Of a DNA stretch of 64,000 nucleotides, positions 17,451 to 62,729 are shown piece by piece (positions within the stretch are counted from its first letter, which is position 1; every line of letters begins with the position of its first letter). The stretch is from positions 1 through 64,000 of IMG/VR virus record IMGVR_UViG_3300037010_003311; one strand, 5' to 3'. The position numbers were made by a program, and so were the translations under genes. The notes under the pieces were generated by a model that worked only from the letters and a program-made list of their open reading frames with translations, did not search any database and was not told the origin of the DNA.

Positions 17451-17462
17451 TGAGGACTAACT

Positions 17463-31427: not shown

Positions 31428-32453
31428 ATGACAACAGTTAAAATTAAAAATAAAGATAAAACAGTTGGGCCAAAATATAAACTAGGTGAGCCAAAAGATT
31501 TTAACGGAAGAACTCTGTTTAGAGTTATAGCATTAAGAGCTTTTAGCAATGTAAATATTGGCGATATCGGTGGCTGGATTGAAACCGAAGATAACTTGTC
31601 CCATAGTGGTGACGCTTGGGTAGGCGATGAGGCAAGAGTCTATGACGAGGCAAGAGTATATGATAATGCTCATGTATTTAATAATGCCTGCGTGTATGGT
31701 AAGGCTCAAGTTAGGGGCGATGCCAGAATATATGACCAAGCTACTATATTTGGTAAAGCTAATGTATTTGGTAAAGCCCAAATATTTGAGGATGCAAATA
31801 TATACGATGAGGCTAAGGTTTATAATAATGCAAGAGTGCGTGGTAATACCAAAGTATATAATAATGCTAAAATACATGATCGAGCTAGAGTAAGTGATAA
31901 TGCTAGAGTAAGTGATAACGCAATAATAGATGGATCGGCTCAGGTATATGGTAATGTTAGGATATATGGGAATTCTAGAATTTTTGGTAATGCCAAAGTA
32001 TATGATGATGCCTGCGTGTATGGTAAGGCTCAAGTTAGAGGTGAGGCCAGAATATATGACGAAGCTACTATATTTGGTAAAGCTAAGGTATTTGGTAAAG
32101 CTCAAATATATGAGGAAGCAAATATATATGATGATGCTCAAGTGTACGGTAATACTAAAATATCTGGTTATGGTGAAGTATATGATAATGCTCAGGTATT
32201 TGGTAATGGATTGATTAAGGGTAATACCCAAGTATATGGTGACGCCATAGTTACCAAAGCCGTTAATACAATATCCACTTCTAGATATGATATTACGATT
32301 ACCGACAATTATCTAAAAATCGGGAGTGAAAATCACCCAATCGATGATTGGGAAGCTTTTACAGACGAGCAGATAGCTGACATGGATACCGGAGCACTAG
32401 AGTGGTGGAACATTTGGAAGCCAAGCATATTCAGCATGATAAAAAAGTATTAA
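31428..32453 (+). CDS. capped hexapeptide-repeat protein
   Basis: N-cap, long repeat tract with an internal block duplication, C-cap. Confidence 0.9.
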   Translation: MTTVKIKNKDKTVGPKYKLGEPKDFNGRTLFRVIALRAFSNVNIGDIGGWIETEDNLSHSGDAWVGDEARVYDEARVYDNAHVFNNACVYGKAQVRGDARIYDQATIFGKANVFGKAQIFEDANIYDEAKVYNNARVRGNTKVYNNAKIHDRARVSDNARVSDNAIIDGSAQVYGNVRIYGNSRIFGNAKVYDDACVYGKAQVRGEARIYDEATIFGKAKVFGKAQIYEEANIYDDAQVYGNTKISGYGEVYDNAQVFGNGLIKGNTQVYGDAIVTKAVNTISTSRYDITITDNYLKIGSENHPIDDWEAFTDEQIADMDTGALEWWNIWKPSIFSMIKKY

Positions 32454-32555
32454 ATTATAATAATTTTAATTTATAATGTGACTGAGGGTTGAGGTTTAGA
32501 ATTCCATATTATATAACGATTCGCGAAGCTGAATCGGTAAAGAGAAAGGTAACTT

Positions 32556-32855
32556 ATGAAATACGTAATACTTGATTTTAATAACGGTAAAGTCTTCCCA
32601 GATAATCATTTATATCAAGAAGCTTTAAACTTTTGTAATTCTGATATGCAAACTATAACGATTGGGTCCGAATTATTTTTTCATCAGTTTAGACTGTTGG
32701 TTAAAACCAAAGTTATCAATAATGAAGATTATCAGTTTATTTTCAAAACTGATAATCACGAAATGTTATTAAATGTTAGCTCCGATGGTGCGTTATGTGA
32801 ATGGTATCCATCGGATTATAATGTATCATTTAATACAATTATCAAAATTATATAA
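32556..32855 (+). CDS. hypothetical protein inside the repeat-gene cluster
   Basis: ORF with RBS. Confidence 0.6.
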   Translation: MKYVILDFNNGKVFPDNHLYQEALNFCNSDMQTITIGSELFFHQFRLLVKTKVINNEDYQFIFKTDNHEMLLNVSSDGALCEWYPSDYNVSFNTIIKII

Positions 32856-32951
32856 CTGGAATATTATGACATTACAAAAAGAAATTAAAATCCTTTAGAA
32901 GATGTTCAATTACTGTATAAATAAAAAATAACTCAAAAAGAAGGAAATATT

Positions 32952-33785
32952 ATGACACAATCAAATGAAATTAAAAACGAGAATAAAGCAATTGCACCAA
33001 AATATAAACTTGGTGAAGCAAAAACGTTTAACGGGAAAACTCTTTTTAGAGTTGTAGCATTGAGAACATTTAGCAATGTTGCTGCTGGTGATATCGGTGG
33101 CTGGATTGAAATCGAAGCTAACTTGTCCCATAGTGGAGATGCTTGGGTTTATGACGAAGCTATGGTATATGATGGGGCAAGAGTTAGTGGTAATGCTATG
33201 GTATTGGATCATGCTATTGTATTTGGTAACTCGATGATATACGATAATGCCATGGTATTGGATCATGCTATTGTATTTGGTAACTCGATGGTATTTGATA
33301 ATGCCATGGTATTTGATAATGCTATGGTATTTGATTATGCTATGGTATTTGATAATGCCATGGTATTTGATTATGCTATGGCATATTGTAAAGCTAGGGT
33401 ATATGGTGATGCTCGGGTATTTGGTAATGCTGAAGTATATGGTGATGCTCGGGTATTTGGTAATGCTGAAGTATATGGTGATGCGGTTGTATATGGTAAC
33501 TCGATGGTATACTCCGGAGCTAAAGTATATGGTGGTGCTCAGGTGTATGGCGAAACTGAGATTTCAGATAGTGCTCAAGTATGGGGTAATGCAAAAATTT
33601 TTGGTAAAGCAAAAATTTCTGGGAACGCAAGAGTTTTTGATAAAGCCGAAGTTTTTGGTAATATTTGGGTTTATGGTGATACATTAGTTCATGATAACAC
33701 AAAAATTTATGATAATGCTAAAATTTCTTGTAAAACAATCATTTGGGGCAAAACACTTATTACTGAAACATACAAGGATAAGTAA
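32952..33785 (+). CDS. hexapeptide-repeat protein without C-cap
   Basis: N-cap and repeats; divergent end. Confidence 0.9.
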   Translation: MTQSNEIKNENKAIAPKYKLGEAKTFNGKTLFRVVALRTFSNVAAGDIGGWIEIEANLSHSGDAWVYDEAMVYDGARVSGNAMVLDHAIVFGNSMIYDNAMVLDHAIVFGNSMVFDNAMVFDNAMVFDYAMVFDNAMVFDYAMAYCKARVYGDARVFGNAEVYGDARVFGNAEVYGDAVVYGNSMVYSGAKVYGGAQVYGETEISDSAQVWGNAKIFGKAKISGNARVFDKAEVFGNIWVYGDTLVHDNTKIYDNAKISCKTIIWGKTLITETYKDK

Positions 33786-34489
33786 TGATAGAATTAAAAT
33801 ATAAACTAGGTGAATCAAAAGAGTTCGAAGGGAGAACTCTTTTTAGGGTCGTAGCACTGAGATCATTTAGCAATGTAACAGCCGGTGATATCGGTGGCTG
33901 GATTGAAATCGAAGATAATTTGTCACATAGTGGAGATGCTTGGGTCTATCGTGATGCTAAGGTATATGGGAATGCCCGAGTATTTGGTGATGCTCATATA
34001 AGTAATAATGCTCAGGTATTTGGTAATGCTCGAATAAATGATGATGCCTGGATAGGCAATAATGCTCAGATATATGGTAATGCTTGCGTGCATGGTAATG
34101 CTCAGGTATATGATAATGCTGAAGTATATGATAATGCCGAAGTATTTGATAATGCCGAAGTATTTGATAATGCCTGCGTATATGGTAATGTTCAGGTATT
34201 TGATAATGCTGAAGTATATGGTGATGCCCGGGTGGTTGATAATGGTGTAGTTGATAGTAATGCTCAAGTATGTGGCAATGCTTTGGTAACTAAAGCAGTT
34301 AATACAATAACCACCAATAAATATATTATCACGATTGCTGACAATTACATGAAAATCGGTTGTCGGAATCACCCAATCGATGATTGGGAAGCTTTTACAG
34401 ACGAGCAGATATCTGACATGGATACCGGAGCATTAGCTTGGTGGAAAGTTTGGAAGCCAATTATATTTACCATAATAAATGCTTATTAA
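33785..34489 (+). CDS. capped hexapeptide-repeat protein
   Basis: N-cap, repeats, C-cap ending WKPIIFTIINAY. Confidence 0.9.
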   Translation: MIELKYKLGESKEFEGRTLFRVVALRSFSNVTAGDIGGWIEIEDNLSHSGDAWVYRDAKVYGNARVFGDAHISNNAQVFGNARINDDAWIGNNAQIYGNACVHGNAQVYDNAEVYDNAEVFDNAEVFDNACVYGNVQVFDNAEVYGDARVVDNGVVDSNAQVCGNALVTKAVNTITTNKYIITIADNYMKIGCRNHPIDDWEAFTDEQISDMDTGALAWWKVWKPIIFTIINAY

Positions 34490-34516
34490 ATAAGCTAACT
34501 ACAAAAAGGAAAGATT

Positions 34517-35167
34517 ATGATACAATCAACTGAAATTAAAAACGAGAATAAAGCAATTGAACCAAAATATAAACTTGGAGGCACAAAAACATTTAACGGG
34601 AGAACTCTTTTTAGAGTTATAGCATTAAGATCTTTTAGCGATGTGATGGCTGGTGATATCGGTGGTTGGGTAGAAACTGAAGATAACCTAGCACAAGATG
34701 GTGACGCTTGGGTCTATGATGATGCTATGGTATATGATGGGGCAAGAGTTAGTGGTAATGCTGTGGTATTGGATCATGCTATTGTATTTGGTAACTCGAT
34801 GATATACGATAATGCCATGGTATTTGATAATGCCGTGGTATATGGTAATGCCATGGTATATGATTATGCTATGGCATATTGTAAAGCTAGGGTATATGGC
34901 AATGCTCGGGTATTTGGTAAGGGATTGGTTAAAGGTAAAGCCCAAGTATATGGTAACGCCATAGCTACCAAAGCAGTTAATACGATGCATACTGATGCTT
35001 ACAATATTACCATTATTGATAATTATATAACTATTGGGTTCGAAAATCACCCAATCGCTGATTGGGAAGCATTTACCGACGAGCAGATAGCTGACATGGA
35101 TACTGGAGCCCTAGCGTGGTGGAAAGTTTGGAAGCCAATTATATTTGCTATAATAAATGCTTATTAA
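34517..35167 (+). CDS. capped hexapeptide-repeat protein
   Basis: N-cap, repeats, C-cap. Confidence 0.9.
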   Translation: MIQSTEIKNENKAIEPKYKLGGTKTFNGRTLFRVIALRSFSDVMAGDIGGWVETEDNLAQDGDAWVYDDAMVYDGARVSGNAVVLDHAIVFGNSMIYDNAMVFDNAVVYGNAMVYDYAMAYCKARVYGNARVFGKGLVKGKAQVYGNAIATKAVNTMHTDAYNITIIDNYITIGFENHPIADWEAFTDEQIADMDTGALAWWKVWKPIIFAIINAY

Positions 35168-35194
35168 CTAAGCTAACTGCAAAAAGGAAATAAT

Positions 35195-35974
35195 ATGACA
35201 AAAGTAGATAATAAAGCAATTATACCAAAATATAAACTTGGTGTAGCAAAAGAGTTCGATGGGAGAACTCTTTTTAGAGTTGTAGCGTTAAGAGATTTCG
35301 GTGACATAAAAGCCGGTGATATCGGTGGCTGGATCGAAACTGAAACTAACTTATCTCATAGTGGTAACGCTTGGGTCTATGATGATGCCAAAGTACAAGA
35401 TAATGCAAGAGTGAAGGATAATGCAGTAATTTGGGATAATGTGGTTGTATATGATAACGCAATGGTATATGGTAATGCAGTAATTTGGGATAATGTGGTT
35501 GTATATGATAACGCAATGGTATATGGTAATGCAGTAATTTGGGATAATGTGGTTGTATATGATAACGCAATGGTATATGGTAATGCCCGGATATTGGATA
35601 ATGCCAAAGTATATGATAACGCAATGGTATATGATAATGCAAGAGTTAGTGATACCGCCCAGGTTTATGGTAATGCTAAAATATATGGTATGGTTGAAGC
35701 ATACGATAATGTTCGTATATTTGGTGACACATGGGTTACCGGTAATACTTAAGTATATGGTAACGCCATAGCTACCAAAGCAGTTAATACGATGCATACT
35801 GATGCTTACAATATTACCATTATTGATAATTATATAACGATTGGATTCGAAAATCACCCAATCGTTGATTGGGAAACATTTACAGATGATGAAATATCTA
35901 AAATGGATACCGGAGCACTAGCGTGGTGGAAAGTTTGGAAGCCAATTATATTTGCTATAATAAATGCGTATTAA
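35195..35974 (+). pseudogene. capped hexapeptide-repeat gene with a single in-frame TAA (35750-35752)
   Basis: GGT AAT ACT TAA GTA TAT here versus GGT AAT ACT CAA GTA TAT in the paralog at 36427-36444; frame continues to an intact C-cap. Confidence 0.85.
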
Positions 35975-35991
35975 ATAAATAAGGATAAAAA

Positions 35992-37584
35992 ATGGTAGGA
36001 AAAAAATATAAACTTGGAGAATCAAAAAAGTCCCAAGGAAGAACTCTTTTTAGAGTTGTAGCGTTAAGAGATTTCGGTGACGTAAAAGCAGGTGATATCG
36101 GTGGTTGGATAGAAACTGAAACTAACTTATCTCATAGTGGTGATTCTTGGGTCTATGATGAGGCCAGAGTTAGTGGTGATACTTGGGTCTATGGTAATGC
36201 CAAAATATCCAATAATGCACAGATATTCGGTAATGCCTGCATATATGGTAATACCAAAGTAGGGGATGAAGCTCAGGTATTTGGTAATGCCATCGTATAT
36301 GGTAATGCTTTGATATATGGTTCTACTCAGGTATTTGGTAATGTTGAAATATATGAGAATGCCCAAGTATTTGGTATGGCTAAAGCATACGATAATGTTC
36401 GTATATTTGGTTATGCATGGATTACCGGTAATACTCAAGTATATGGTAACACCATAGTTACCAAAGCGGTTAATACAATATACACTGGTGAGTATGATAT
36501 TATCATTACTGACAACTATATAAAGATTTGGTGGGAAAATCACCCAATCGACGTTTGGGAAGCATTTACCGACGAGCAGATAGCTGACATGGATACCGGA
36601 GCGCTAGCGTGGTGGAAAGTTTGGAAGCCAATTATATTTGATATAATACAAAAAGGAAATAATATGACATCACAAAAAGAAATTAAAAACTTCTGGGAAA
36701 AGATGCTTAATTACCGTATAAATAAAAATAACTCCAAAAAAGAAGGAAATAATATGATGCAATCAAATGAAATTAAAAACGAGAATAAAGCAATTGTACC
36801 AAAATATAAACTTGGTGAAGCAAAAACCTTTAATGTAAGAACTCTTTTTAGAGTTGAAGCTCTGAGATCATTTGGCAATGTGTCTACCGGTGATATCGGT
36901 GGCTGGATTGAAAACGAAGATAATTTGTCTCATAGTGGAGATGCTTGGGTCTATGACGAAGCTATGGTATATGGTAATGCTCGAGTGAGTAATGACGCAA
37001 TAGTGAGGGATAATGCCTGCATATATGGTAATACCAAAGTAGGGGATGAAGCTCAGGTATTTGGTAATGCCATCGTATATGGTAATGCTTGTATAAGTGA
37101 TAATGCTCAGGTATATGGTAATGCTCGTATAAGTGATGACGCCCAAGTATACGATACAGCTCATGTATTCGATAACGCATATATAATCGATAATGCTTGG
37201 ATAGGTAATAATGCAAGAGTATGTGGCAATGCGCGTATAACTGATGATTCGCGAGTATACGATAACGCATTGATTAGTGGTCATTCCTTGATTTCTGATA
37301 GGGCTTTGATATATGGCAATGCCCAGGTATTTGATAATGGCTTGGTTAAGGGTAATACCCATGTATGGGGTAACGCCGAAGTTACCAAAGCAGTTATTAC
37401 GATACATACCGATGCTTACAATATTACCATTACTGATAATTATATAACTATTGGGTTCGAAAATCACCCAATCGCTGATTGGGAAACATTTACTGATGAT
37501 GAAATATCCAAAATGGATGCAGGAGCGTTAGATTGGTGGCGAGTCTGGAAGCCAATTATATTTGCTATAATAAATGCTTATTAA
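35992..37584 (+). CDS. in-frame fusion of two capped hexapeptide-repeat genes
   Basis: two complete N-cap/repeat/C-cap units; former intergenic DNA with its RBS is read through; internal start near 36754. Confidence 0.85.
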   Translation: MVGKKYKLGESKKSQGRTLFRVVALRDFGDVKAGDIGGWIETETNLSHSGDSWVYDEARVSGDTWVYGNAKISNNAQIFGNACIYGNTKVGDEAQVFGNAIVYGNALIYGSTQVFGNVEIYENAQVFGMAKAYDNVRIFGYAWITGNTQVYGNTIVTKAVNTIYTGEYDIIITDNYIKIWWENHPIDVWEAFTDEQIADMDTGALAWWKVWKPIIFDIIQKGNNMTSQKEIKNFWEKMLNYRINKNNSKKEGNNMMQSNEIKNENKAIVPKYKLGEAKTFNVRTLFRVEALRSFGNVSTGDIGGWIENEDNLSHSGDAWVYDEAMVYGNARVSNDAIVRDNACIYGNTKVGDEAQVFGNAIVYGNACISDNAQVYGNARISDDAQVYDTAHVFDNAYIIDNAWIGNNARVCGNARITDDSRVYDNALISGHSLISDRALIYGNAQVFDNGLVKGNTHVWGNAEVTKAVITIHTDAYNITITDNYITIGFENHPIADWETFTDDEISKMDAGALDWWRVWKPIIFAIINAY

Positions 37585-37610
37585 ATAGCTAACCGCAAAA
37601 AGGAAATAAT

Positions 37611-38360
37611 ATGATGCAATCAAATGAAATTAAAAACGAGAATAAAGCAATGGTAACTCCAAAATATAAGCTTGGTGAGTCAAAAGAGGTCTTAGGGAGA
37701 ACTCTTTTTAGAGTTGTAGCGTTAAGAGATTTCGGTGACGTAAAAGCAGGTGATATCGGTGGTTGGGTAGAAACTGAAGATAACCTAGCACAAGATGGTG
37801 GAGCTTGGGTAGAAACTGAAGATAACCTAGCACAAGATGGTGGAGCTTGGGTCTATGATGAAGCTATGGTATATGATGGGGCAAGAGTCTATGATGACGC
37901 AAGAATATTTGATAAAGCGATTGTATGTGGTAACTCGCTGGTATATGGTAACTCGCTGGTGCGCGAGTATGCTATGGTATATGATAATGCTGAGGTAGCT
38001 GGTAAGGCCGGGATAGCTGGTAATGCTAAAGTATATGATAACGCGTTAGTTAGTGGCTATTCCTTGGTCTCTGGTAATGCTTCGATATATGGTGCAGCCC
38101 GGATATTTGATAATGGGGTAGTTGATAGTATCGCCCAAGTATGCGGTAACGCAGTAGTTACCAAAGCAGTTAATACCATACACACTGATAAATATATTAT
38201 CACGATTACTGATAATTATCTAAAAATTGGATGTCAGAATCACCCGATCGACGTTTGGGAAGCATTTACCGACGAGCAGATAGCTGACATGGAGGTAGGA
38301 GCATTAGATTGGTGGCGAGTCTGGAAGCCAATTATATTTACCATAATAAATGCTTATTAA
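37611..38360 (+). CDS. capped hexapeptide-repeat protein
   Basis: has a 42-bp tandem duplication encoding WVETEDNLAQDGGA twice. Confidence 0.9.
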   Translation: MMQSNEIKNENKAMVTPKYKLGESKEVLGRTLFRVVALRDFGDVKAGDIGGWVETEDNLAQDGGAWVETEDNLAQDGGAWVYDEAMVYDGARVYDDARIFDKAIVCGNSLVYGNSLVREYAMVYDNAEVAGKAGIAGNAKVYDNALVSGYSLVSGNASIYGAARIFDNGVVDSIAQVCGNAVVTKAVNTIHTDKYIITITDNYLKIGCQNHPIDVWEAFTDEQIADMEVGALDWWRVWKPIIFTIINAY

Positions 38361-38387
38361 CTAAGCTAACTATGAAAAGGAAAGATT

Positions 38388-38963
38388 ATGACAAAAGTAG
38401 ATAATAAAGAAATTACACCAAAATATAAACTTGGTGAAGCAAAAGAGTTCGATGGGAGAACTCTTTTTAGGGTCGTAGCGTTAAGAGATTTCGGTGACGT
38501 AAAAGCCGGTGATATCGGTGGTTGGGTAGAAAATGAAACTAACTTGTTTCATAGTGGTGACGCTTGGGTCTATGATGAGGCTAGAGTTAGTGGTGATGCT
38601 TGGGTCTATGATGAGGCTAGAGTTAGTGGTGATGCGCGGGCATATGGTAATGCCTGCATATATGGTAATACCAAAGTAGGGGATGAAGCTCAGGTATTTG
38701 GTAATGCCATCGTATATGGTAATGCTTGTATAAGTGATAATGCTCAGGTATATGGTAATGCTCGTATAGGTAATAATGCGCGGGTATATGGTAATGCTTG
38801 CGTGCATGGTAATGCTCAGGTATATGGTAATGCTGAAGTATATGGTAATGCTGAAGTATATGGTAATGCTGAAGTATATGGTAATGCTGAAGTATATGGC
38901 AGCGCAAAAATATCTAACAATATTTGGATATTTGATAATGCCCGTATATATGGTAAGGCCTAA
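38388..38963 (+). CDS. truncated hexapeptide-repeat protein (decaying copy)
   Basis: TAA at a Q position of the repeat; degenerate repeat sequence continues to about 39045; no C-cap. Confidence 0.75.
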   Translation: MTKVDNKEITPKYKLGEAKEFDGRTLFRVVALRDFGDVKAGDIGGWVENETNLFHSGDAWVYDEARVSGDAWVYDEARVSGDARAYGNACIYGNTKVGDEAQVFGNAIVYGNACISDNAQVYGNARIGNNARVYGNACVHGNAQVYGNAEVYGNAEVYGNAEVYGNAEVYGSAKISNNIWIFDNARIYGKA

Positions 38964-39077
38964 ATATTTGATAACGCTCAAGCATACGATAATGCATTGA
39001 TTAGGGGGTTAGTCCACGATCTCTGGTAATGATTTGATATACGCGGATTAAATAGCTAAATACAAAAAGGAAAGATT

Positions 39078-39857
39078 ATGACAAAAGCAGATAATAAAGG
39101 TGTGACACCAAAATATAAACTTGGTGAAGCAAAAACCTTTAATGGAAGAACTCTTTTTAGAGTTGTAGCATTGAGAACATTTAGCAATGTTGCTGCTGGT
39201 GATATCGGTGGCTGGATTGAAATCGAAGCTAACTTGTCCCATAGTGGAGATGCTTGGGTCTATGATGAAGCTATGGTATATGGTAAGGCCAGAGTTGGTA
39301 ATGACGCAATAGTGAGGGATAATGCCAGAATGAGTGATAATGCTCATGTATATGGTAATGCGTTGATAGGTGGTAATGCGGTTGTATATGGTAACGCAAT
39401 AGTATACGCTAGAGCGCAAGTATATGATAATGCACAAATATCTGGTGATACCCATGTGTGCGATAATGCTAAGGTATTTAATAATGCTAAGGTATATGGT
39501 AATGCTCAAATTTCTGGTTATGCTAAGGTATTTAATAATGCTAAGGTATATGGTAATGCCCATATCCATGGTAATGCTAATGTTGGGGATAATGCTAAAG
39601 TATATGGTAATGGTTTGGTTGGCGGATATACTAGGATATATGTTGATACGATAGTTACCAAAGCAGTTAATACCATATTCACTGATAAATATGAGGTTAC
39701 AATTTCTGACAATTATATAAAAATCGATTGCGAGAATCACTCACTATTCGATTGGGAAAATTTTACTGATAATCAGATATCCAAAATGGATACTGGAGCA
39801 TTAGAATGGTGGAAAGTTTGGAAGCCAATTATATTTGCTATAATAAATGCAGATTAA
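39078..39857 (+). CDS. capped hexapeptide-repeat protein
   Basis: N-cap, repeats, C-cap. Confidence 0.9.
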   Translation: MTKADNKGVTPKYKLGEAKTFNGRTLFRVVALRTFSNVAAGDIGGWIEIEANLSHSGDAWVYDEAMVYGKARVGNDAIVRDNARMSDNAHVYGNALIGGNAVVYGNAIVYARAQVYDNAQISGDTHVCDNAKVFNNAKVYGNAQISGYAKVFNNAKVYGNAHIHGNANVGDNAKVYGNGLVGGYTRIYVDTIVTKAVNTIFTDKYEVTISDNYIKIDCENHSLFDWENFTDNQISKMDTGALEWWKVWKPIIFAIINAD

Positions 39858-39912
39858 ATTAGAATAATTTAATCCCGTATAAGAATAACTACGAAAAAAG
39901 AAGGTATTTAAA

Positions 39913-40167
39913 ATGAAAATTAAAGGATTACGAAATAAACAATACTGAACATTTAAATGGTACGGGTAAAAGTAAATATACCCATGTAATGATAAACCGG
40001 TTCAAATATTGAGTACGGATAGAAAAAATAATTTATATCCAGTATTAGCGCACAGTGATGAATTCCAAGAAGAATGTGGCGTAAGGGCATTTACTAAATT
40101 TGGAAAGTTTACTCACGGAATAGATTCGGTATATGATCTAGTAGAGTTGAATACATTAAAACTTTAG
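39913..40167 (+). pseudogene. frameshifted remnant of the MKISM-KKYT family
   Basis: frame from 39985 reads CNDKPVQILSTDRKNNLYPV...FT..G...YDLVE; upstream KYT and MKI are out of frame. Confidence 0.6.
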
Positions 40168-40215
40168 AATCAATAATTTATAATTTTGGATTAAAAAAAT
40201 AGTAAAGGAGTTATC

Positions 40216-40527
40216 ATGCATGTACATGATTGGATAAACGAAAGAATGTATGGGAAATGCCCGGATGAAGAAAAATATGCTGTAGCTTTTTTACATATAA
40301 AGGCTACTACAACAGCAGTAAGTACTTGGGTTATAGAACCCATAATGAAACAACATAAACTTTTTTGTACGTACAAAGGAAGCAAATATAGAGTCACTGG
40401 ATGCAGCCGTATGGGTGATATATGGTTAGTAAAAAATTATAATAAAGATAATGGATACGATCTTAGAGTAGACGTTGAAGAGTGTACGGATTGGTCTGAA
40501 AAATTGGATAAAGAAAAAGGAGAATGA
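40216..40527 (+). CDS. phage hypothetical protein
   Basis: YRVTGCSRMGDIWL..GYDLRV. Confidence 0.7.
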   Translation: MHVHDWINERMYGKCPDEEKYAVAFLHIKATTTAVSTWVIEPIMKQHKLFCTYKGSKYRVTGCSRMGDIWLVKNYNKDNGYDLRVDVEECTDWSEKLDKEKGE

Positions 40528-40528
40528 T

Positions 40529-40882
40529 ATGAAGATATCAATGGATAAAAAATATACATGTTGCGGAGAGCCAATACGTATATTATGTATAGATGGAAAT
40601 GACAGTCTCTATCCGGTCATTGGGCTGAGAGATGATGGAACTATACTTAAATTCAGAGAAGATGGGAAATGTTCGCCAGAGTATAACCTCGTGGAGGTTT
40701 GGGAACCAGTAGTAGAAGAATGGTGCCTATTTACCGATGAAACATTAGTTGGGGCATGGTTGTTGCAATTTCTTGATAATGAAGATGGTCGTTTTTATGC
40801 CCTGGGGGTATCGGATAGTTTTGATAAATGTTATAAATTTACGGGAACCATCCCTAAACACTTAAAAGGAAATTTAAAATGA
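40529..40882 (+). CDS. tandem family 2 member (MKISMDKKYT...LPEHL type)
   Basis: shares RILC.D, NLVEVWEP..EWC.F and CYKF.G with neighbours. Confidence 0.85.
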   Translation: MKISMDKKYTCCGEPIRILCIDGNDSLYPVIGLRDDGTILKFREDGKCSPEYNLVEVWEPVVEEWCLFTDETLVGAWLLQFLDNEDGRFYALGVSDSFDKCYKFTGTIPKHLKGNLK

Positions 40883-41238
40883 AAATAGAAATGGGTAAGA
40901 AATATACGAGTAATGGTGACTCTGTTCGAATATTATGTACCGATAGACCTAACGATAATGGGTACACAGTTGTTGGATTATTTGAAAATGGCATGATAGG
41001 CTATTTTACAGAAGACGGGGAAAGTACAACTACTGATCGTCGTAACTTAGTTGAGGTCTGGGAACCGCAACGTGGCGAGTGGTGCCTATTTACAGATTCA
41101 TCATTTAATGGAGCAATGCTGATGCAATTTCTTGTTTGTACAATTTATGGTAGATTTCATGCGATGGGGTCGTACCGCAGTTTTGATCACTGTTATAAAT
41201 TTGATGGAATACTCCCAGAACACTTAAAAGGAGAATGA
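40879..41238 (+). CDS. tandem family 2 member
   Basis: same motif set. Confidence 0.85.
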   Translation: MKIEMGKKYTSNGDSVRILCTDRPNDNGYTVVGLFENGMIGYFTEDGESTTTDRRNLVEVWEPQRGEWCLFTDSSFNGAMLMQFLVCTIYGRFHAMGSYRSFDHCYKFDGILPEHLKGE

Positions 41239-41239
41239 T

Positions 41240-41956
41240 ATGAAGATATCAATGGATAAAAAGTATACAAGTAATGGGCAAGCAGTAAGAATTTTGTGCA
41301 TAGACCGAAAGAATGATTTGTCAGTCGTAGGAATGCTTACGAATAGTAAAATATGTTATTTTTCGGATAACGGTCATAGTCTCGCCGGAGAATGTTATAA
41401 CTTAGTAGAAGCATGGGAACCGCAACGTGGAGAGTGGTGCCTGTTTTATAATATTCTGCAGCCTCACATCATTTTAGATCAATTTGTAGAAATGACTGAT
41501 CAAGGAGAATTCAAAACTCCCGATAATTTAAGTTGGAAATATTGTTATAAATTTACTGGTATTCTACCAGAACATTTACAAGTGCAGAAAAAATATATAG
41601 AACTAACGGTAGAAATGGATAAAAAATATACGTCTGATGGAAGGCCAGTTCGCATATTATGTAATGATAGACCAAGTGGTGATTCTGTAGTAGGACTTTA
41701 TGAAAATGGCGATTTATGTTATTTTACTGGTAAAGGTTATAGTCTCGCCGGAGAATGTTATAACTTAGTAGAAGCATGGGAACCGCAACGTGGAGAGTGG
41801 TGTTTATTTTGTAATGTTCTGAAACCACACAACACTATTTTAGATCAATTTGTAGAAATGACCGAACTCGGAGAATTCCAAACTCCTGATAATTTAAGTT
41901 GGAAATATTGTTATAAATTTACTGGTATTCTACCAGAACACTTAAAAGGAGAATGA
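41240..41956 (+). CDS. tandem family 2 member with two fused units
   Basis: unit repeated twice, second halves near-identical. Confidence 0.85.
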   Translation: MKISMDKKYTSNGQAVRILCIDRKNDLSVVGMLTNSKICYFSDNGHSLAGECYNLVEAWEPQRGEWCLFYNILQPHIILDQFVEMTDQGEFKTPDNLSWKYCYKFTGILPEHLQVQKKYIELTVEMDKKYTSDGRPVRILCNDRPSGDSVVGLYENGDLCYFTGKGYSLAGECYNLVEAWEPQRGEWCLFCNVLKPHNTILDQFVEMTELGEFQTPDNLSWKYCYKFTGILPEHLKGE

Positions 41957-41957
41957 T

Positions 41958-42314
41958 ATGAAGATATCAATGGATAAAAAGTATACAAGTAATGGACAAG
42001 CAGTAAGAATTTTGTGTATAGATGGGTATAAAGAAGATTACCCAGTCGTCGCGATGTATTTAGATGGTGATATTAGATATTTTACTGAAGATGGAGAAAG
42101 TGCAACTGGTGCTCATCGTAACTTAGTTGAGGTATGGGAACCGCAAGTTGGTGAGTGGTGTTGGTTCTGGGATAGTAATGATCAAAAACATGCATCTTTA
42201 TATGAATTCGTAAAAATGGATGATGTTGGAAAATTTACCTCCACTGCTGGTTGTCATTGGAAACATTGTGCCCAATTTGATGGAACTCTCCCAGAACACT
42301 TAAACGGAGAATGA
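41958..42314 (+). CDS. tandem family 2 member
   Basis: same motif set. Confidence 0.85.
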   Translation: MKISMDKKYTSNGQAVRILCIDGYKEDYPVVAMYLDGDIRYFTEDGESATGAHRNLVEVWEPQVGEWCWFWDSNDQKHASLYEFVKMDDVGKFTSTAGCHWKHCAQFDGTLPEHLNGE

Positions 42315-42315
42315 T

Positions 42316-42834
42316 ATGAAGATATCAATGGGTAAAAAGTATACAAGTAATGGAAAGAACTTACGTGTAGTTTGTATAGATAGAGAAAATACATTTGGGT
42401 ATAAAGTTGTTGGGGTATTTGATGATGGAGATATAAAATGCTTTAGATCAAATGGTGATAGCGCGCTTGACTCAAAATATGACTTACAAGAAGTATGGGA
42501 ACCAACTGAAAACGAGTGGTGTTGGTTCTGGGATTGTAATGATTCACAACATATAATTTTATCTAAATTTAAGGAAAAGAATGCTGATGGAATGTTCGGG
42601 TCGGTCGATGGATATTTCTGGATTTATTGTGCTAAATTTACTGGAGAACTACCAGAACATTTACAAGAGAAGACTATAGATTTTAAAAAAACTTTTGTAG
42701 CGAGGGAAGCCAGATGTCAGGATTGTACATATTTGCTTGAATTAGATGGTGAGGGGTATTGTAATTCGGTTAATGATATAGTTAAGAATATAATCGACTG
42801 TCCTTATGGCCGCAGCGAAATTCATAATTGTTAA
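42316..42834 (+). CDS. tandem family 2 member with Cys-rich C-terminal extension
   Basis: unit plus CxxC...C...C tail. Confidence 0.85.
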   Translation: MKISMGKKYTSNGKNLRVVCIDRENTFGYKVVGVFDDGDIKCFRSNGDSALDSKYDLQEVWEPTENEWCWFWDCNDSQHIILSKFKEKNADGMFGSVDGYFWIYCAKFTGELPEHLQEKTIDFKKTFVAREARCQDCTYLLELDGEGYCNSVNDIVKNIIDCPYGRSEIHNC

Positions 42835-42915
42835 ACGTACCCAATATGAGCTTAGTATTATTTGGGATAATTGATGTTGATATGCATAAATAGAAAAATA
42901 TAAAAAAGGAAATAA

Positions 42916-43482
42916 ATGGCTACTAAAGAACTTGAATTAACAGAAGAACAACAGGCCAAGTTTAAGTTGTATTATGAAAATGTTCATTATAAAATGTTGG
43001 GTATTAAACGGGTTAAATACACTTTTTATAAATGTGAGGTGTGCATCAGAGAAGTTGAAGTTAAATTGAACGAAATTAAACGTAGAATAAAAGTAGGTAA
43101 ACCTTTAATTTGTAGTAAATGTAGAGCAAAAGGTTTACACCTCTTGGCACCAAAATTTTCATCCGATGAATATTCTAAGATGATTTCTTCTCGAGGATTA
43201 AGTAAAACTAATACATCCGGTTATTTAGGTTCATCTCTGTATACCACAAAAGGTTATACATGCGTACGCAACCAAGTTAGGTACAAACTAGTACGAAAAT
43301 GTTTTCATATTCCGTATAACTCAGATGATGATTTAAAATGGGGGGCCTGGTTACGCGATGATTATATTAGGAGTATGGGGTACCCACATGCTTTAAATTT
43401 TTCAGATGAAGAACATGAAGCGTTACGCATTAAGTACCAGGACCACCCAAAGAAAGATTGGGTATCAAAAAATAAGGGATAA
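42916..43482 (+). CDS. zinc-ribbon plus AP2-like DNA-binding protein
   Basis: two CxxC; NTSGY.G ... A..RD ... LNF AP2 signature. Confidence 0.7.
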   Translation: MATKELELTEEQQAKFKLYYENVHYKMLGIKRVKYTFYKCEVCIREVEVKLNEIKRRIKVGKPLICSKCRAKGLHLLAPKFSSDEYSKMISSRGLSKTNTSGYLGSSLYTTKGYTCVRNQVRYKLVRKCFHIPYNSDDDLKWGAWLRDDYIRSMGYPHALNFSDEEHEALRIKYQDHPKKDWVSKNKG

Positions 43483-43485
43483 AGT

Positions 43486-43653
43486 ATGTATGATGCATTA
43501 ATCAAAGCCACTAGCCTTATGGTTATAATGGTAGCGATACTACTTATACTGGGGGAAATTGCAATAACTGTGGTTTATGGTCATTGGGGTTATGCAATTG
43601 GTGAAATATTTATAATATTATTTTTTGCGGCATTATATGACTTACGAACGTAA
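43486..43653 (+). CDS. 55-aa membrane protein (not in ORF track)
   Basis: RBS; hydrophobic; shares YGHW.Y.IGEIFII with the next ORF. Confidence 0.7.
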   Translation: MYDALIKATSLMVIMVAILLILGEIAITVVYGHWGYAIGEIFIILFFAALYDLRT

Positions 43654-43695
43654 TTCATATAGTTATGAGAAAAAATTAAATAAAAAGGTTAAAGA

Positions 43696-43866
43696 ATGTT
43701 TGATGCGTTACGAAATACAATTATTTTGGTGGTTATAGCGGCATTGATGTTACTTATACCGGGCGGAATCGTAATAACCATGATTTATGGTCATTGGGAT
43801 TATATAATTGGTGAAATATTTATAATATTCTTTGCTATTGTATTATCTTACGTCTACGCCGAATAA
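43696..43866 (+). CDS. 56-aa membrane protein, tandem paralog (not in ORF track)
   Basis: paralog of 43486-43653; shared downstream TTATGAGAAAAAATTAAATAAAAA. Confidence 0.7.
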   Translation: MFDALRNTIILVVIAALMLLIPGGIVITMIYGHWDYIIGEIFIIFFAIVLSYVYAE

Positions 43867-43909
43867 TGAAATAATTATGAGAAAAAATTAAATAAAAAAA
43901 GGATAAAGA

Positions 43910-44308
43910 ATGAAATATGTACACTGCGCAGACTGGTGTGACACGGATGAAATCGAGATCACAGAAGTTATTAAATACGAGGTACTAGTAACTTTTGGTG
44001 GTGGAATGGGTGGAGCAAATATTACTTATTATAGTAAGGATATTATGAAATCAACTATAATAGATAATGAAAATTATATTAGTATTGATCATTTTGGTGA
44101 TATAATTGAATTAAATCTTGCTCACGTAGTTGAACTAAAAAAATGTTTAGTAATTGAAATGCTTAATAAAACCAAAAATAGTTTTAGAGTATTTAAGGTT
44201 GGCAGAATAGATACAAACTATGAAATTGTATACCGCTACACTGGAGACTGGTATAAATCTTTATTATATGAAATAAAAAATCTTGAAACTGACACAAAGG
44301 ATATATAA
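43910..44308 (+). CDS. hypothetical protein
   Basis: RBS plus ORF. Confidence 0.65.
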   Translation: MKYVHCADWCDTDEIEITEVIKYEVLVTFGGGMGGANITYYSKDIMKSTIIDNENYISIDHFGDIIELNLAHVVELKKCLVIEMLNKTKNSFRVFKVGRIDTNYEIVYRYTGDWYKSLLYEIKNLETDTKDI

Positions 44309-44523: not shown

Positions 44524-45347
44524 TGAAAGTTTGTAGAACCTTACGAGTAGAAGAACTAGTAGATGTCAACTGGGCGGAAGAGATATTAAATAATTTTCAT
44601 CAAACCTTAAAATCAAAAGGTTTTAATTTTTGCGAAATTAGGTATAGCGGATTTAATTCGCAAGGTGATGGAGCATCATTTACTTTTAATTCCGTCGATG
44701 TCGAGCGGTTTATTAAAATAAATAGCTGTGCTAGTAAATACAAACATTTACTTAAAGCTATTAATAATGGTATGACCCAACTAACCTTCCATAGTCAAAT
44801 TGTGAATCATTTTTACGCTCATAATAAAACCATTATTATTGAGGCATCTAAATATATATCAGATAATGTTTCGGAAAAAAAATGCATTAAAATAAATAAC
44901 GAAATTATCGAACTACAAAATGAGATTGAAGAAAAATATATATCATTATGTGATGAGATCTATAAGGAGTTAGAACAAGCATATTATGGTTTGGTTGAGA
45001 ATATAGAAGAAGATCTCAAGGAAGAAGAAGAAACCAAACGTAAAAATGAAGAAATATTTAAAAAGTATAATGGTGAACTGGTAAAATTTCAGTGCCTTGG
45101 AAAATTTAGACCGGGTTTAGTAATTGGATATGATTATGATACAACATGTCTTAGAATTGCAACACCCTCTGGTCTCGGAACTGCGACCTTTCCAGAGTTT
45201 GGGATTGTTGCGCCAGAAGTACAAAAAAGCTTTCTAATCATATTACCAATTAAGGATTGTGAAATTATTATAACTGATCCTAATATGGTTAATGATATTA
45301 AAGCTGGAATTCTAGCTGCTTTTAATAAAAGATATGGAGATGACTAA
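44523..45347 (+). CDS. phage hypothetical protein
   Basis: YSGFNSQGDGASF motif. Confidence 0.7.
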   Translation: MKVCRTLRVEELVDVNWAEEILNNFHQTLKSKGFNFCEIRYSGFNSQGDGASFTFNSVDVERFIKINSCASKYKHLLKAINNGMTQLTFHSQIVNHFYAHNKTIIIEASKYISDNVSEKKCIKINNEIIELQNEIEEKYISLCDEIYKELEQAYYGLVENIEEDLKEEEETKRKNEEIFKKYNGELVKFQCLGKFRPGLVIGYDYDTTCLRIATPSGLGTATFPEFGIVAPEVQKSFLIILPIKDCEIIITDPNMVNDIKAGILAAFNKRYGDD

Positions 45348-45751
45348 TGATTAACCCGGAGATATTTACAGTACCAGAAAGAATCAATACCCTTAAACCA
45401 AATGAGGTTTTTGTATTTGGTTCTAACTTGGCGGGTATACATGGTGCTGGTGCAGCACTGCTTGCTCGTAATAAGTTTGGTGCGGCCCAAGGTTTTGGGT
45501 ATGGTTTATGTGGACAATCGTTTGCAATACCAACTAAAGATATGCAGATCAAAACATTACCATTAAGTAAAATTAAAAATTATGTTGATCTGTTTATATT
45601 GGAAGCCGCTAAGCACCCAACTAAAACATTTTTGATTACCCAAATCGGTTGTGGACTAGCTGGTTATAAACCAGAAAACATGTTTCCACTTTTTGAAAAA
45701 GTACCAAGTAATTGTAGATTACCAATAGCTTGGTCATATTTAAATAAATAA
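45347..45751 (+). CDS. macro-domain-like phage protein (A1S_2505-like family)
   Basis: VFVFGSN..G.HGAGAA, GQSFAIPT, IGCGLAG. Confidence 0.75.
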   Translation: MINPEIFTVPERINTLKPNEVFVFGSNLAGIHGAGAALLARNKFGAAQGFGYGLCGQSFAIPTKDMQIKTLPLSKIKNYVDLFILEAAKHPTKTFLITQIGCGLAGYKPENMFPLFEKVPSNCRLPIAWSYLNK

Positions 45752-47610: not shown

Positions 47611-48378
47611 ATGTTAACCGAGCAAGATAAATTAAAAATCGTTTTAAAAAGTATGTCTAAAAAAAGATATAAAGCAGCGTTAAAAGAGCTTAACAATATT
47701 CCGTTATTTAAAGCTGATGGCAACTATCCGTTGTCGTTAGATGTTAGAGCTGTAATGGCGAATGAGGGTTCGATTGGTTTGGCTAAACTTTTAAGAGATA
47801 CGTTTAGATTTGATTTAACAGATCCAAACGTTAAAGATACCCCAAGTAGAGTAGCTAGTATGTGGGTAAATGAACTTATGGTTGGCAGATATACGGATAA
47901 ACCACGTCTGGAAGCATTTCCCGTCGAGGAAAAACATTTAAGTAAACATAGTATAGAAATGTTGCACGAAGATGCCTCTGTTTTAGAGTACGATGGGATA
48001 ATCATTAAAAAGATTGATGTTCGATCATTATGTTCGCATCATCTTATGCCTTTCTTTTCTGATGGTAAAAAGTCTTTTGCTTTAGTAGCTTATATACCAA
48101 CAACTAAGTTTTTAGGTATTAGTAAAATTCAACGTTTATCTAATTGGTATGGTGCAAGACCATCACTACAAGAGCAATTAACTTGGTCAATATATAAAGA
48201 GATGTGTGACACTCTTGGTACAGACGATGTATTTGTAATTATGAAAAACATTACACATACTTGCGAAACTCTACGTGGAGCTAAAACTGAAGATGGTAGT
48301 ACTACTACTATGTTCTATGGTGGAAAATTTAAAGATATCAAGAAACGTAATGAAGTAATCAATTTGGCAGCAGATTAA
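47611..48378 (+). CDS. folE: GTP cyclohydrolase I
   Basis: DTP.RVA, SLCSHHLMPF, GISKI.R, LQE, HTC..RG. Confidence 0.93.
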   Translation: MLTEQDKLKIVLKSMSKKRYKAALKELNNIPLFKADGNYPLSLDVRAVMANEGSIGLAKLLRDTFRFDLTDPNVKDTPSRVASMWVNELMVGRYTDKPRLEAFPVEEKHLSKHSIEMLHEDASVLEYDGIIIKKIDVRSLCSHHLMPFFSDGKKSFALVAYIPTTKFLGISKIQRLSNWYGARPSLQEQLTWSIYKEMCDTLGTDDVFVIMKNITHTCETLRGAKTEDGSTTTMFYGGKFKDIKKRNEVINLAAD

Positions 48379-48877: not shown

Positions 48878-49022
48878 AACGTGCTCTAATAAATTGATTG
48901 ATGATTCAATTTGGCAAAAATATATTAATGGTGAAACCGATCTAAAGGATAAAAAATTTTTCAATAATTTTTATTCTAAACTTAAAAAAAGGATATCAAA
49001 TGATATTAAAATTGAAAAATGA
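48849..49022 (+). CDS. small CxxC ORF between the split-intein halves (possible homing endonuclease remnant)
   Basis: MKFQNPPLCRTCSNKL; overlaps both flanking ORFs in a third frame. Confidence 0.45.
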   Translation: MKFQNPPLCRTCSNKLIDDSIWQKYINGETDLKDKKFFNNFYSKLKKRISNDIKIEK

Positions 49023-62629: not shown

Positions 62630-62714
62630 TATCAAAGTAATACCATCATATAAACCAAAGTTGCCAATACCGGACCGAGGACATACTACTTCAGAACTTG
62701 AAGCTAAGTTATGA
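62626..62714 (+). pseudogene. frameshifted and internally deleted copy of 63358-63630
   Basis: shares SYKPKLPI and TTS.LEAK; its ATG is out of frame. Confidence 0.55.
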
Positions 62715-62729
62715 AGATTGAAACGAAAG

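What the first reader, a model, noticed from the sequence alone, without database searches (positions are those of the whole stretch)
39913..42834. Second tandem gene family directly after the beta-helix array
Seen: five genes with six units of about 118 aa (KKYT.NG..RILC.D...NLVE.WEP..GEWC.F...CYKF.G.LPEHL) plus a decayed seventh. The junction AAAGGAGAATGATATGAAGATATCAATGG recurs almost exactly four times, so each gene end supplies the next RBS and any new duplicate is expressed automatically. Conserved Cys/Trp scaffold with variable segments between. Inference: a second diversifying family, possibly functionally linked to the first.
Basis: partly seen in the sequence, partly recalled or inferred. 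Interest (0 to 1): 0.6.

Follow-up and report, generated by a model that had tools for sequence, protein, structure and literature searches.

The report
Tandem array of twin-barrel phage genes
A large T4-like phage from microbial mats carries six tandem copies, plus one decayed copy, of an uncharacterised small protein built from two SH3/Tudor-like barrels; related phages have gained, lost and reordered these copies, but each copy is conserved rather than fast-diversifying and its function is unknown.

Summary
Window 40529-42834 has five back-to-back genes with six ~118-aa units (43-57% identical, 73% for U3/U4). A decayed N-terminal half lies at 39913-40167. The 29-nt junction (SD, stop, start) occurs four times against zero expected.

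The window is the start of a 227-kb T4-like virus record from microbial-mat/sediment metagenomes. The family has no Pfam, NCBIfam or PADLOC match, and only function-less PHROGs. A confident AF2 model (pLDDT 92) shows two small five-stranded beta-barrels of the generic SH3/Tudor/KOW type. The proteins are acidic and lack export signals.

Related contigs carry one to about six units. One relative has the decayed copy intact and the cassettes in a different order with the same junction. The family also occurs as a single copy in unrelated siphovirus-like contigs.

Orthologue dN/dS is 0.17-0.25, and the genome has no reverse transcriptase. The family is therefore expanded and reshuffled, not under gene-wide diversifying selection. 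Beta-helix genes are neighbours in five related loci, but neither family depends on the other, and co-folding gave no verdict.

Best reading, with function inferred only: co-expressed early accessory binding proteins, each paralogue specialised. The array evolves by recombination at conserved gene-end/gene-start homology.

The parts
39913..40167 (+). Decayed seventh unit ('unit 0'): a short start ORF, then a frameshifted N-terminal barrel remnant; the C-terminal barrel is missing
   Evidence: Sequence reading. HMM match E 5.8e-5 to profile positions 9-59. Own-genome match with 3 stops. Closest relatives are P0042/P0027-type proteins. An intact 148-aa orthologue sits at the same place in relative L026. 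Strain L027 and run X4 lack about 40038-40164/40193.
40156..40184 (+). Sigma-70-like promoter match (TTAAAA-17-TATAAT) ahead of ORF103; a possible start of the transcription unit. Weak evidence.
   Evidence: Promoter-like sites are not enriched over shuffles, and the array has no plus-strand terminator-like site.
40216..40527 (+). 103-aa ORF unrelated to the family. Its last ~14 nt are the family junction (it ends ...KGE, stop).
   Evidence: 98% identical in L027. No family assignment.
40529..40882 (+). U1, a single twin-barrel unit (117 aa)
   Evidence: Orthologues P0028/P0029 and L026/L027 at 82-90% aa, dN/dS 0.17-0.25.
40879..41238 (+). U2, a single unit (119 aa). Its start overlaps the U1 stop (ATGA); this is the second junction type.
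   Evidence: Orthologues at 92-94% aa in L026/L027 with the same junction type.
41240..41956 (+). U3+U4, two units fused in one 238-aa protein; they are sister copies (73% aa)
   Evidence: The fusion is conserved in L026 (235 aa, 81%) and in P0033.
41958..42314 (+). U5, a single unit (118 aa); this is the sequence that was modelled
42316..42834 (+). U6, a unit (to ~42675) plus a lineage-specific Cys-rich tail of about 54 aa
   Evidence: U6-type orthologues P0012 and L009_a lack the tail. Related contigs diverge at ~42663.
41191..41304 (+). Extended junction repeat (gene 3' end + SD + stop + start + gene 5' end). It is 94% identical to 41909-42022 and 81% identical to 42267-42380. The 29-mer cores lie at 40516, 41227, 41945 and 42303.
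   Evidence: The core contains a 6-bp palindrome (TGATAT-GAAG-ATATCA) spanning the stop and start codons.
31428..39857 (+). Upstream beta-solenoid (YdcK/hexapeptide/bactofilin-like) paralogue array. It is context only and has not been shown to belong to the same system.

Best explanation
This is a co-oriented, apparently co-transcribed and translationally coupled array of paralogous accessory genes. It lies in the variable, non-core part of the replication/early region of a T4-like jumbo phage. Each unit encodes a small, acidic protein with no apparent export signal, made of two SH3/Tudor-like beta-barrels with a conserved core (three invariant Cys plus Trp/Phe/Tyr) and variable loops.

Evolution of the array (shown). 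It follows a birth-and-death and cassette-shuffling pattern. There is one recent in-situ duplication that became a fusion (U3/U4). There are older paralogues that each have orthologues in other phages. One copy is decaying. Cassette order is permuted in a relative.

Recombination mechanism (inferred). Recombination probably uses the homology provided by the conserved gene ends and starts. Because that tract also carries the SD, stop and start, every rearranged cassette stays expressed.

Function (inferred, not shown). Each paralogue is held by purifying selection, and differences concentrate in loops. The units are therefore most likely specialised protein-binding modules that act early in infection on different host (or phage) proteins, in host take-over or counter-defence.
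For: Array, units and junction.

Genome context: topoisomerase II subunits, DNA ligase, PolB exonuclease domain and GTP cyclohydrolase I, all on one strand. The nearest catalogued phages share only ~30% identity in topo II.

Fold: AF2 pLDDT 92.4, pTM 0.70, nine strands in two barrels. Matches are to Tudor/PWWP/chromo/KOW/SH3 domains and to B. subtilis protein YorP, at Z <= 5.3. Single-barrel phage hypotheticals match at rmsd 1.4-3 A. Atlas neighbours are viral hypothetical proteins.

Protein properties: pI 4.7-5.1; variability is concentrated at residues 24-27, 47-54, 73-80 and 82-100.

Selection: orthologue dN/dS 0.17-0.25.

Tree: the window units are not monophyletic. U3+U4 are sisters. U1 and U2 cluster with P0028/P0029. 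U6 clusters with P0012/L009_a.

Loss and reordering: L026 has unit 0 intact and the order unit0, U3U4, U1, foreign gene, C-barrel fragment, U2, with the same junction. L027 has a further deletion. Alternative joints U4-end to U1-start and U6-end to U1-start occur in contigs from co-occurring populations.

Mosaic synonymous divergence: for U3 vs U4, pS is 0.33 in the gene body but 0.91 in the first 25 codons, while U3 vs U5 is 0.30 in those 25 codons. The junction tracts are 114 nt long with 7 mismatches.

Early-region placement elsewhere: single copies lie next to ERF/SSB/Gp157 genes and next to primase/AAA_24 genes in unrelated small phage contigs from the same samples.
Against: No functional evidence of any kind: there is no characterised homologue, the host is unknown and no RNA data exist. 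The fold matches lie in the range the tool itself calls generic (Z under 8). Co-transcription and translational coupling are read from sequence only; promoter-like sites are not enriched and the junction RNA is not unusually structured. Junction conservation is largely explained by conserved protein termini, which are the same in single-copy genes of unrelated phages, so the junction need not be a dedicated recombination element. Joints seen in Logan contigs at 85% likeness come from related phages, not proven variants of this one. Three invariant cysteines could point to a metal or redox role rather than plain binding.
Confidence: 0.5

Rival explanations
1. The twin-barrel proteins are partners (adaptors, chaperones, regulators or inhibitors) of the neighbouring beta-solenoid proteins, so the two arrays form one two-component system.
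For: Beta-solenoid family genes flank family members in five related loci: L007, L010/L011, L018, L026, L027. Both families are expanded side by side here.
Against: The same genome has beta-solenoid genes at 1774-2448 and 61700-64343 with no twin-barrel gene nearby. The beta-solenoid family matches 198 catalogued phage records, while a tblastn search of that collection with the U3U4 protein found nothing. The twin-barrel gene occurs alone in L009, L012, L014/15, L020 and L022. Copy numbers do not pair: about 10 beta-solenoid genes against 6-7 units. The adjacency is seen only in contigs related to this phage, so it may simply be inherited synteny of one variable region.
Confidence: 0.12
2. The units are nucleic-acid-binding regulators, as many Tudor/KOW/PWWP/chromo-like barrels are, acting on phage or host DNA/RNA or on the transcription machinery.
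For: Fold neighbours include the Shuguo PWWP-ssDNA complex, NusG/Spt5 KOW domains, and the CarD and UvrD/PcrA Tudor domains that bind RNA polymerase. The array sits within a replication-gene region.
Against: All units are acidic, with net charge -5 to -9 and pI 4.7-5.1. All these matches are at generic Z values of 4.5-5.3 with 2-20% identity. No sequence-family match exists.
Confidence: 0.1
3. The family is an arms-race family under diversifying (positive) selection, in which new copies are fixed because they escape or match fast-changing host targets.
For: There are variable loops on a conserved scaffold. Copy number ranges from 1 to about 6 among relatives. Gains, losses and a pseudogene are observed.
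Against: Whole-gene dN/dS is 0.17-0.25 between orthologues at dS 0.16-0.53, lower than the 0.38 of a neighbouring beta-solenoid gene. Each paralogue lineage is conserved across phages. The genome has no reverse transcriptase or DGR. Site-specific positive selection was not tested.
Confidence: 0.12
4. The copies are redundant duplicates with no separate roles: dosage amplification or neutral repeat expansion that is on its way to decay.
For: One copy is decayed and further deleted in a close strain. One relative carries a C-barrel-only fragment.
Against: Paralogues are old (dS saturated, 43-57% aa identity), yet all six are intact and under purifying selection, with orthologues retained in other phages. 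Redundant copies would not persist this long in a phage genome.
Confidence: 0.06

Closest known systems
PeSL-mediated modular shuffling in hyperplastic regions of T4-type phages (Arbiol et al. 2010, PMC2839356; Comeau et al. 2014, PMC4122927)
   Same: Small non-essential ORFs of unknown function lie in the variable regions of a T4-like genome. They are separated by a short repeated regulatory sequence. Related phages differ by insertion, deletion and reordering of whole cassettes at those repeats.
   Different: PeSLs are intergenic early promoter plus stem-loop terminator units flanking unrelated ORFans. Here the repeat is the coding 3' end + SD + stop + start + coding 5' end of paralogous genes. 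The array shows no promoter or terminator signal, and the cassettes are homologous to each other.
Tandem Tudor / SH3-like small beta-barrel domains (e.g. 53BP1, FXR1/2, UHRF1 TTD, Spt5 KOW pairs; bacterial CarD and UvrD/PcrA Tudor domains; B. subtilis YorP, PDB 2heq)
   Same: The model has two consecutive five-stranded small barrels of ~55-60 aa each. The best structural neighbours all belong to this fold class.
   Different: Only generic similarity: Z <= 5.3, Foldseek E >= 0.1, 2-20% identity. There is no sequence-family match. The three invariant cysteines are not a feature of those families.
Uncharacterised phage families phrog_4466, phrog_21026, phrog_21668, phrog_16354; Pfam PF26890 (Phage_HP1_YO09) as an Atlas look-alike
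   Same: The N-terminal barrel matches phrog_4466 weakly (E 2e-7 for the fused gene). Distant superfamily members match these PHROGs. Atlas neighbours include PF26890 clusters.
   Different: None of these families has a known function. The window proteins do not match PF26890 even at E <= 1. The two-barrel architecture with the WEPxxGEWC linker belongs to a narrow group: 16 clusters at E <= 1e-30.
Kelch repeat motif
   Same: The linker segment ('VEVWEPxxGEW') resembles the Kelch blade consensus. This produces summed hits to designed six-blade SAKe propellers.
   Different: No single stretch passes threshold ('stretches 0'). The confident model shows barrels, not four-stranded blades, and no propeller appears in any fold search.
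Gene 'accordion' expansions of host-interaction genes in large DNA viruses (poxvirus K3L; cited from my own knowledge, not checked here)
   Same: Tandem copy-number change of a small accessory gene by recombination between repeats, with later divergence and loss of copies.
   Different: Accordions are recent, near-identical amplifications under strong positive selection. Here the copies are old and divergent, and each is under purifying selection.

Membership tests
SH3-like / Tudor-like small beta-barrel fold class | Five-stranded, highly bent antiparallel barrel of ~50-70 residues | tested here: met
   The AF2 model (pLDDT 92.4) has strands 8-11, 14-20, 30-34, 39-42, 56-59 in the first barrel and 67-71, 80-87, 93-95, 103-106 in the second. 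Each half aligns to Tudor/KOW/PWWP/SH3 chains at rmsd 1.7-3.4 A over 42-63 residues.
SH3-like / Tudor-like small beta-barrel fold class | Homology (not just shared shape) to a named Tudor/SH3/KOW family | tested here: inconclusive
   Best Z is 5.3 and Foldseek E >= 0.1, within the tool's stated background. No Pfam hit.
Tudor 'reader' domains | Aromatic cage that binds methyl-lysine or methyl-arginine | not testable with these tools
Conserved aromatics exist (Y9, F42, W60, W67, F70, F107), but their spatial arrangement is unknown.
Pfam PF26890 Phage_HP1_YO09 | Match to the family HMM at or above the gathering score | tested here: not met
   No hit for any unit even at E <= 1. The similarity comes only from the Atlas feature and shape searches (score 0.80, TM 0.48-0.53).
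phrog_4466 | Significant full-length match to the 70-position profile | tested here: inconclusive
   Only profile positions 1-38 match, covering the N-terminal barrel start. E is 2e-7 for the two-unit gene and 0.017-0.086 for single units.
Kelch repeat / beta-propeller | Four-stranded blades arranged in a propeller | tested here: not met
   Motif-level sequence hits only, with no passing stretch. The model and fold searches show barrels.
PeSL regulatory cassettes of T4-type phages | Strong sigma-70-like early promoter plus stem-loop terminator between ORFs | tested here: not met
   Thirteen promoter-like sites against 25.5 expected. No plus-strand terminator-like site in 39000-44000. Junction folds have z-scores of -1.6 to +1.2.
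PeSL regulatory cassettes of T4-type phages | Related phages differ by cassette gain, loss or reordering at the repeats | tested here: met
   Comparison of L026 and L027 with the window; alternative joints in co-occurring contigs.
Diversity-generating retroelement target | Reverse transcriptase plus template/variable repeat pair | tested here: not met
   No RVT_1 match in the 227-kb record, although controls were positive. The record is ~81% complete, so absence is not absolute.
Family under diversifying selection | dN/dS above 1, gene-wide or at sites | tested here: not met
   Gene-wide dN/dS is 0.17-0.25 for orthologues and 0.22-0.51 for paralogues. Site models were not run.

The most novel reading that the evidence does not exclude
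The twin-barrel units are a new family of phage counter-defence or host-take-over binders. Each paralogue would neutralise a different host protein. The coding-embedded junction (conserved protein termini + SD + stop + start) would work as a built-in cassette-exchange site, letting related and even unrelated co-infecting phages swap, stack and fuse ready-to-express binder modules.
Probability: 0.15. Interest if true: 0.7.

Novelty: new variant of a known kind. Interest (0 to 1): 0.38.

Why it matters
If the reading holds, this adds an uncharacterised two-barrel domain architecture to the catalogue of phage accessory proteins. The wider superfamily has about 1,000 clusters at 50% identity, all from metagenomes and viruses. 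It also gives a clear natural example of how a paralogue array in a jumbo phage is built and reshuffled, with expression signals embedded in the conserved gene ends. It offers six related but distinct binders in one operon for partner-finding experiments. As things stand, it is an ordinary kind of phenomenon: lineage-specific expansion in a variable phage region, with function unknown.

Tried and rejected
1. Catalogued phages (INPHARED): megablast of the whole array and tblastn of the two-unit protein found nothing.

2. Family libraries: Pfam, NCBIfam and PADLOC gave nothing credible for any unit, ORF103 or the 188-aa downstream ORF. Pfam on 20 longer distant relatives and on 43 superfamily members gave only one Lcl_C fusion and sub-threshold hits.

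3. Kelch/propeller idea from the PDB sequence hits: rejected.

4. First AF2 run with only the six paralogues gave pLDDT 64. It was superseded by the 34-sequence run.

5. Co-folding of beta-solenoid protein 39078-39857 with U5 gave score 0.00 and no verdict. This is evidence neither for nor against binding.

6. Host search in 185k prokaryote genomes found only one weak C-barrel hit, in an Ignavibacteria MAG. No host was inferred.

7. DGR: no reverse transcriptase.

8. Promoter/terminator scan and junction RNA folds found nothing above background, apart from a tiny 6-bp palindrome over the stop and start codons.

9. Uniform homogenisation of gene termini: rejected. Mean synonymous difference is 0.61 (5' end), 0.66 (middle) and 0.48 (3' end); only particular pairs share near-identical ends.

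10. RNA evidence: no RNA run holds the stretch.

11. A literature search on jumbo-phage paralogue arrays returned nothing relevant.

Compliance: read laying was given 4,501 letters. Only table 11 was used.
Full report
**1. What is there**

The window is the first 64 kb of a 226,657-bp linear IMG/VR virus record, estimated ~81% complete. GC content is ~32% and essentially all genes are on the plus strand.

Recognisable genes are those of a T4-like replication module:
- topoisomerase II large and medium subunits (15118-18938)
- ATP-dependent DNA ligase (12098-13633)
- a family-B polymerase exonuclease domain (50001-51089)
- GTP cyclohydrolase I (47611-48378)

The closest catalogued phages (Vibrio phage Va1, Campylobacter phage CP220 and others) share only ~30% identity in topo II. 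Four public runs labelled microbial-mat or sediment metagenome hold the stretch.

**2. The observation**

Between 40529 and 42834 lie five abutting ORFs. They contain six ~118-aa units that align with 31 invariant positions at 43-57% identity; the U3/U4 pair reaches 73%.

The phage's own genome has exactly these six units plus one broken match. The broken copy (39913-40167) keeps only a frameshifted N-terminal half.

The 29-nt junction occurs three times exactly and once with one mismatch, against none in 100 shuffles. It reads ...AAA GGA GAA TGA T ATG.... An AGGAG Shine-Dalgarno sequence lies inside the last codons, 6 nt before the next ATG, and the stop codon is 1 nt before that ATG.

- The first junction copy ends an unrelated 103-aa ORF (40216-40527).
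- The U1/U2 boundary is a second junction type, an ATGA overlap.

Independent contigs and proteins from other samples reproduce the order ORF103-U1-U2-U3 (L027, 95% nt), the U3U4 fusion (P0033) and U5 (P0001). The array is therefore not an assembly artefact.

**3. The protein**

*Sequence families.* No unit matches Pfam, NCBIfam or PADLOC. PHROGs give only a weak N-terminal match to function-less phrog_4466.

*Relatives.* The word search found 32 relatives. All are metagenomic. All but one of the JGI-named ones are called 'hypothetical protein', and P0002 carries an unconfirmed JGI label (endonuclease YncB). The exhaustive profile search found 16 cluster representatives at E <= 1e-30, 76 at <= 1e-10 and 1,060 at <= 1e-3. 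In this wider superfamily the N-terminal and C-terminal halves also occur alone, repeated, or attached to other unannotated regions. Scans of 63 of those relatives revealed no informative domain.

*Structure.* With the 34-sequence alignment, AF2 gives a confident model (pLDDT 92.4, pTM 0.70). It has two five-stranded small beta-barrels, residues ~1-60 and ~61-118. Fold searches return only the generic SH3/Tudor/KOW/PWWP/chromo class:
- VIA Z <= 5.3, within the tool's stated background
- Foldseek E >= 0.1
- single-barrel phage hypotheticals at rmsd 1.4-3 A in BFVD
- viral hypothetical clusters in the Atlas

A run of PDB sequence hits to designed Kelch propellers reflects the Kelch-like linker motif only.

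*Properties.* The units are acidic (pI 4.7-5.1, net charge -5 to -9) and have no hydrophobic leader by inspection. Conservation is concentrated in the first 20 residues, the inter-barrel segment (LVEVWEPxxGEWCxF) and the last 15 residues. The most variable stretches are 24-27, 47-54, 73-80 and 82-100, mostly loops and the middle of the second barrel. Three cysteines (C20, C68, C104) are invariant across 34 sequences. Whether they form a metal or disulfide site could not be tested.

**4. How the array evolves**

*Paralogues are old.* dS is saturated (0.7 to above 2.5) and dN/dS is 0.22-0.51.

*The tree shows mixed ancestry.* In a maximum-likelihood tree the six window units are not one clade:
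- U3 and U4 are sisters, i.e. an in-situ duplication, now fused.
- U1 and U2 group with P0028/P0029.
- U6 groups with P0012 and L009_a from other phages.

*Orthologues are under purifying selection.* Comparisons at unsaturated divergence (dS 0.16-0.53) give dN/dS of 0.25 and 0.17 (U1), 0.19 and 0.18 (U2) and 0.19 (U3/U3U4). A neighbouring beta-solenoid gene gives 0.38.

*Copy number varies.* Related viral contigs carry one unit (L007, L009, L012, L014/15), at least two (L008) or three plus fragments (L010/11).

*Order varies.* The 4-kb relative L026 has the order beta-solenoid, beta-solenoid, intact unit 0 (148 aa), U3U4 fusion, U1, an unrelated 136-aa gene, a C-barrel fragment, then U2. It keeps the same junction sequence between U3U4 and U1. 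The close strain L027 has lost ~127 bp more of the decayed copy.

*Co-occurring populations differ.* Logan contigs from the four runs break at the junctions. They contain alternative joints (U4-end to U1-start in three runs; U6-unit-end to U1-start in three runs) and the 40038-40193 deletion. These contigs were laid at 85% likeness, so they represent related co-occurring phages rather than proven variants of this genome.

*The units are mosaic.* Within the window, junction-spanning tracts of particular pairs are far more alike than the gene bodies. For example, 41191-41304 and 41909-42022 share 114 nt with 7 mismatches. The relationships conflict along the gene: U3 vs U4 has synonymous difference 0.33 in the body but 0.91 in the first 25 codons, where U3 instead resembles U5 (0.30). 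This is the signature of recombination or gene conversion near the junctions, not of uniform homogenisation.

*No DGR.* The genome has no reverse transcriptase.

**5. Relation to the beta-helix family**

Beta-solenoid (YdcK/hexapeptide/bactofilin-like; phrog_7964/5070) genes flank family members in L007, L010/11, L018, L026 and L027.

Several facts argue against a required partnership:
- The same genome has further beta-solenoid genes at 1774-2448 and 61700-64343 without twin-barrel genes.
- The beta-solenoid family matches 198 catalogued phage records, whereas a tblastn search of that collection with the U3U4 protein found nothing.
- The twin-barrel gene stands alone in several viral contigs, and in siphovirus-like contigs next to ERF/SSB/Gp157 genes or primase/AAA_24 genes from the same samples.

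The adjacency is therefore best read as inherited synteny of one variable region. An optional functional link is not excluded. The single co-folding job returned no verdict and counts neither way.

**6. Most likely mechanism**

*Shown:* the tandem, same-strand, abutting genes; the SD/stop/start arrangement; the two-barrel model; purifying selection per paralogue; gain, loss, fusion and reordering among relatives; mosaic junction regions.

*Inferred:*
- The genes are one translationally coupled transcription unit. A weak promoter-like site lies at 40156-40184 and there is no terminator-like site in the array.
- Recombination uses the homology created by the conserved protein termini, so every new arrangement stays expressed.
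- The products are specialised protein-binding modules acting early in infection on host or phage proteins.

The last point rests only on fold class, acidity, loop-focused variation, placement among early or replication genes in three unrelated phage backgrounds, and long-term retention of distinct paralogues. I give the overall explanation 0.5. The structural and evolutionary parts are much firmer than the functional part.

**7. Comparison with known systems**

The closest described phenomenon is modular shuffling at PeSL cassettes in the hyperplastic regions of T4-type phages (PMC2839356, PMC4122927). The outcome is the same, but the repeat is of a different kind (coding ends plus RBS rather than promoter plus terminator), and the promoter/terminator criterion is not met here.

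The fold belongs to the SH3/Tudor-like class, without demonstrable membership of any named family.

Overall this is a new variant of a known kind: a real, uncharacterised family in an ordinary evolutionary setting.

**8. Limits**

- No site-model software was at hand.
- The host is unknown.
- No RNA data exist.

Noticed in passing
window 31428-39857; also 1774-2448 and 61700-64000 (continuing to ~64343 in the record): The beta-solenoid family has about 10 genes in the main array. These include a double-length fusion (35992-37584, 530 aa) and members interrupted by stops (35219-35971; 38388-39017). There is also a lone copy and a second three-gene array elsewhere in the genome. The members share a conserved N-terminal ~60 aa and a C-terminal ~70-aa domain (ending ...WWKVWKPIIF.IINAY) around beta-helices of variable length.
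   Followed up: partly
window 40216-40527: This 103-aa ORF is unrelated to the family, but its last ~14 nt are the family junction. It sits where the missing C-terminal barrel of the decayed unit should be, which suggests insertion into, or replacement of, that unit. It is 98% conserved in strain L027 and absent from L026.
   Followed up: partly
window 40527-40542, 41238-41253, 41956-41971, 42314-42329: The junction core contains a perfect 6-bp palindrome (TGATAT GAAG ATATCA). It places the upstream stop and the downstream start in a small AU-rich hairpin. The surrounding RNA is not more structured than shuffles.
   Followed up: partly
window 42676-42834: U6 carries a ~54-aa tail with five cysteines (CxxC, then three spaced Cys). 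U6-type orthologues elsewhere lack it, and it matches nothing else in the window or the fetched loci.
   Followed up: partly
window 43486-43653 and 43696-43866: Two adjacent 55- and 56-aa hydrophobic ORFs are clearly paralogous (both have the motif ...YGHW.Y.IGEIFII.F...). This is another small tandem duplication, just downstream of the array.
   Followed up: no
window 49000-50004 and 50001-51089: An ORF with a sub-threshold intein-splicing-domain match lies directly upstream of the PolB exonuclease-domain ORF. The DNA polymerase gene may be split or contain an intein.
   Followed up: no
window 45347-45751 and 47611-48378: One ORF is an A1S_2505-family phage non-structural protein (NCBIfam E 1e-42). 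The other is a GTP cyclohydrolase I gene, which could belong to a 7-deazaguanine DNA-modification pathway.
   Followed up: no
L020 (6001-6357) and L022 (6001-6387): Single-copy family members occur in small siphovirus-like contigs (ERF/SSB/Sipho_Gp157; DNA methylase/DUF3987/AAA_24). These come from the same JGI samples as the jumbo-phage relatives, which suggests exchange of this gene between unrelated phages in one habitat.
   Followed up: partly
L025 6001-6204 (Ignavibacteria MAG JASFSF010000001.1): This is the only hit in 185k prokaryote genomes: a C-terminal-barrel-only match at 31% identity. It could be a prophage remnant and a faint host hint.
   Followed up: no
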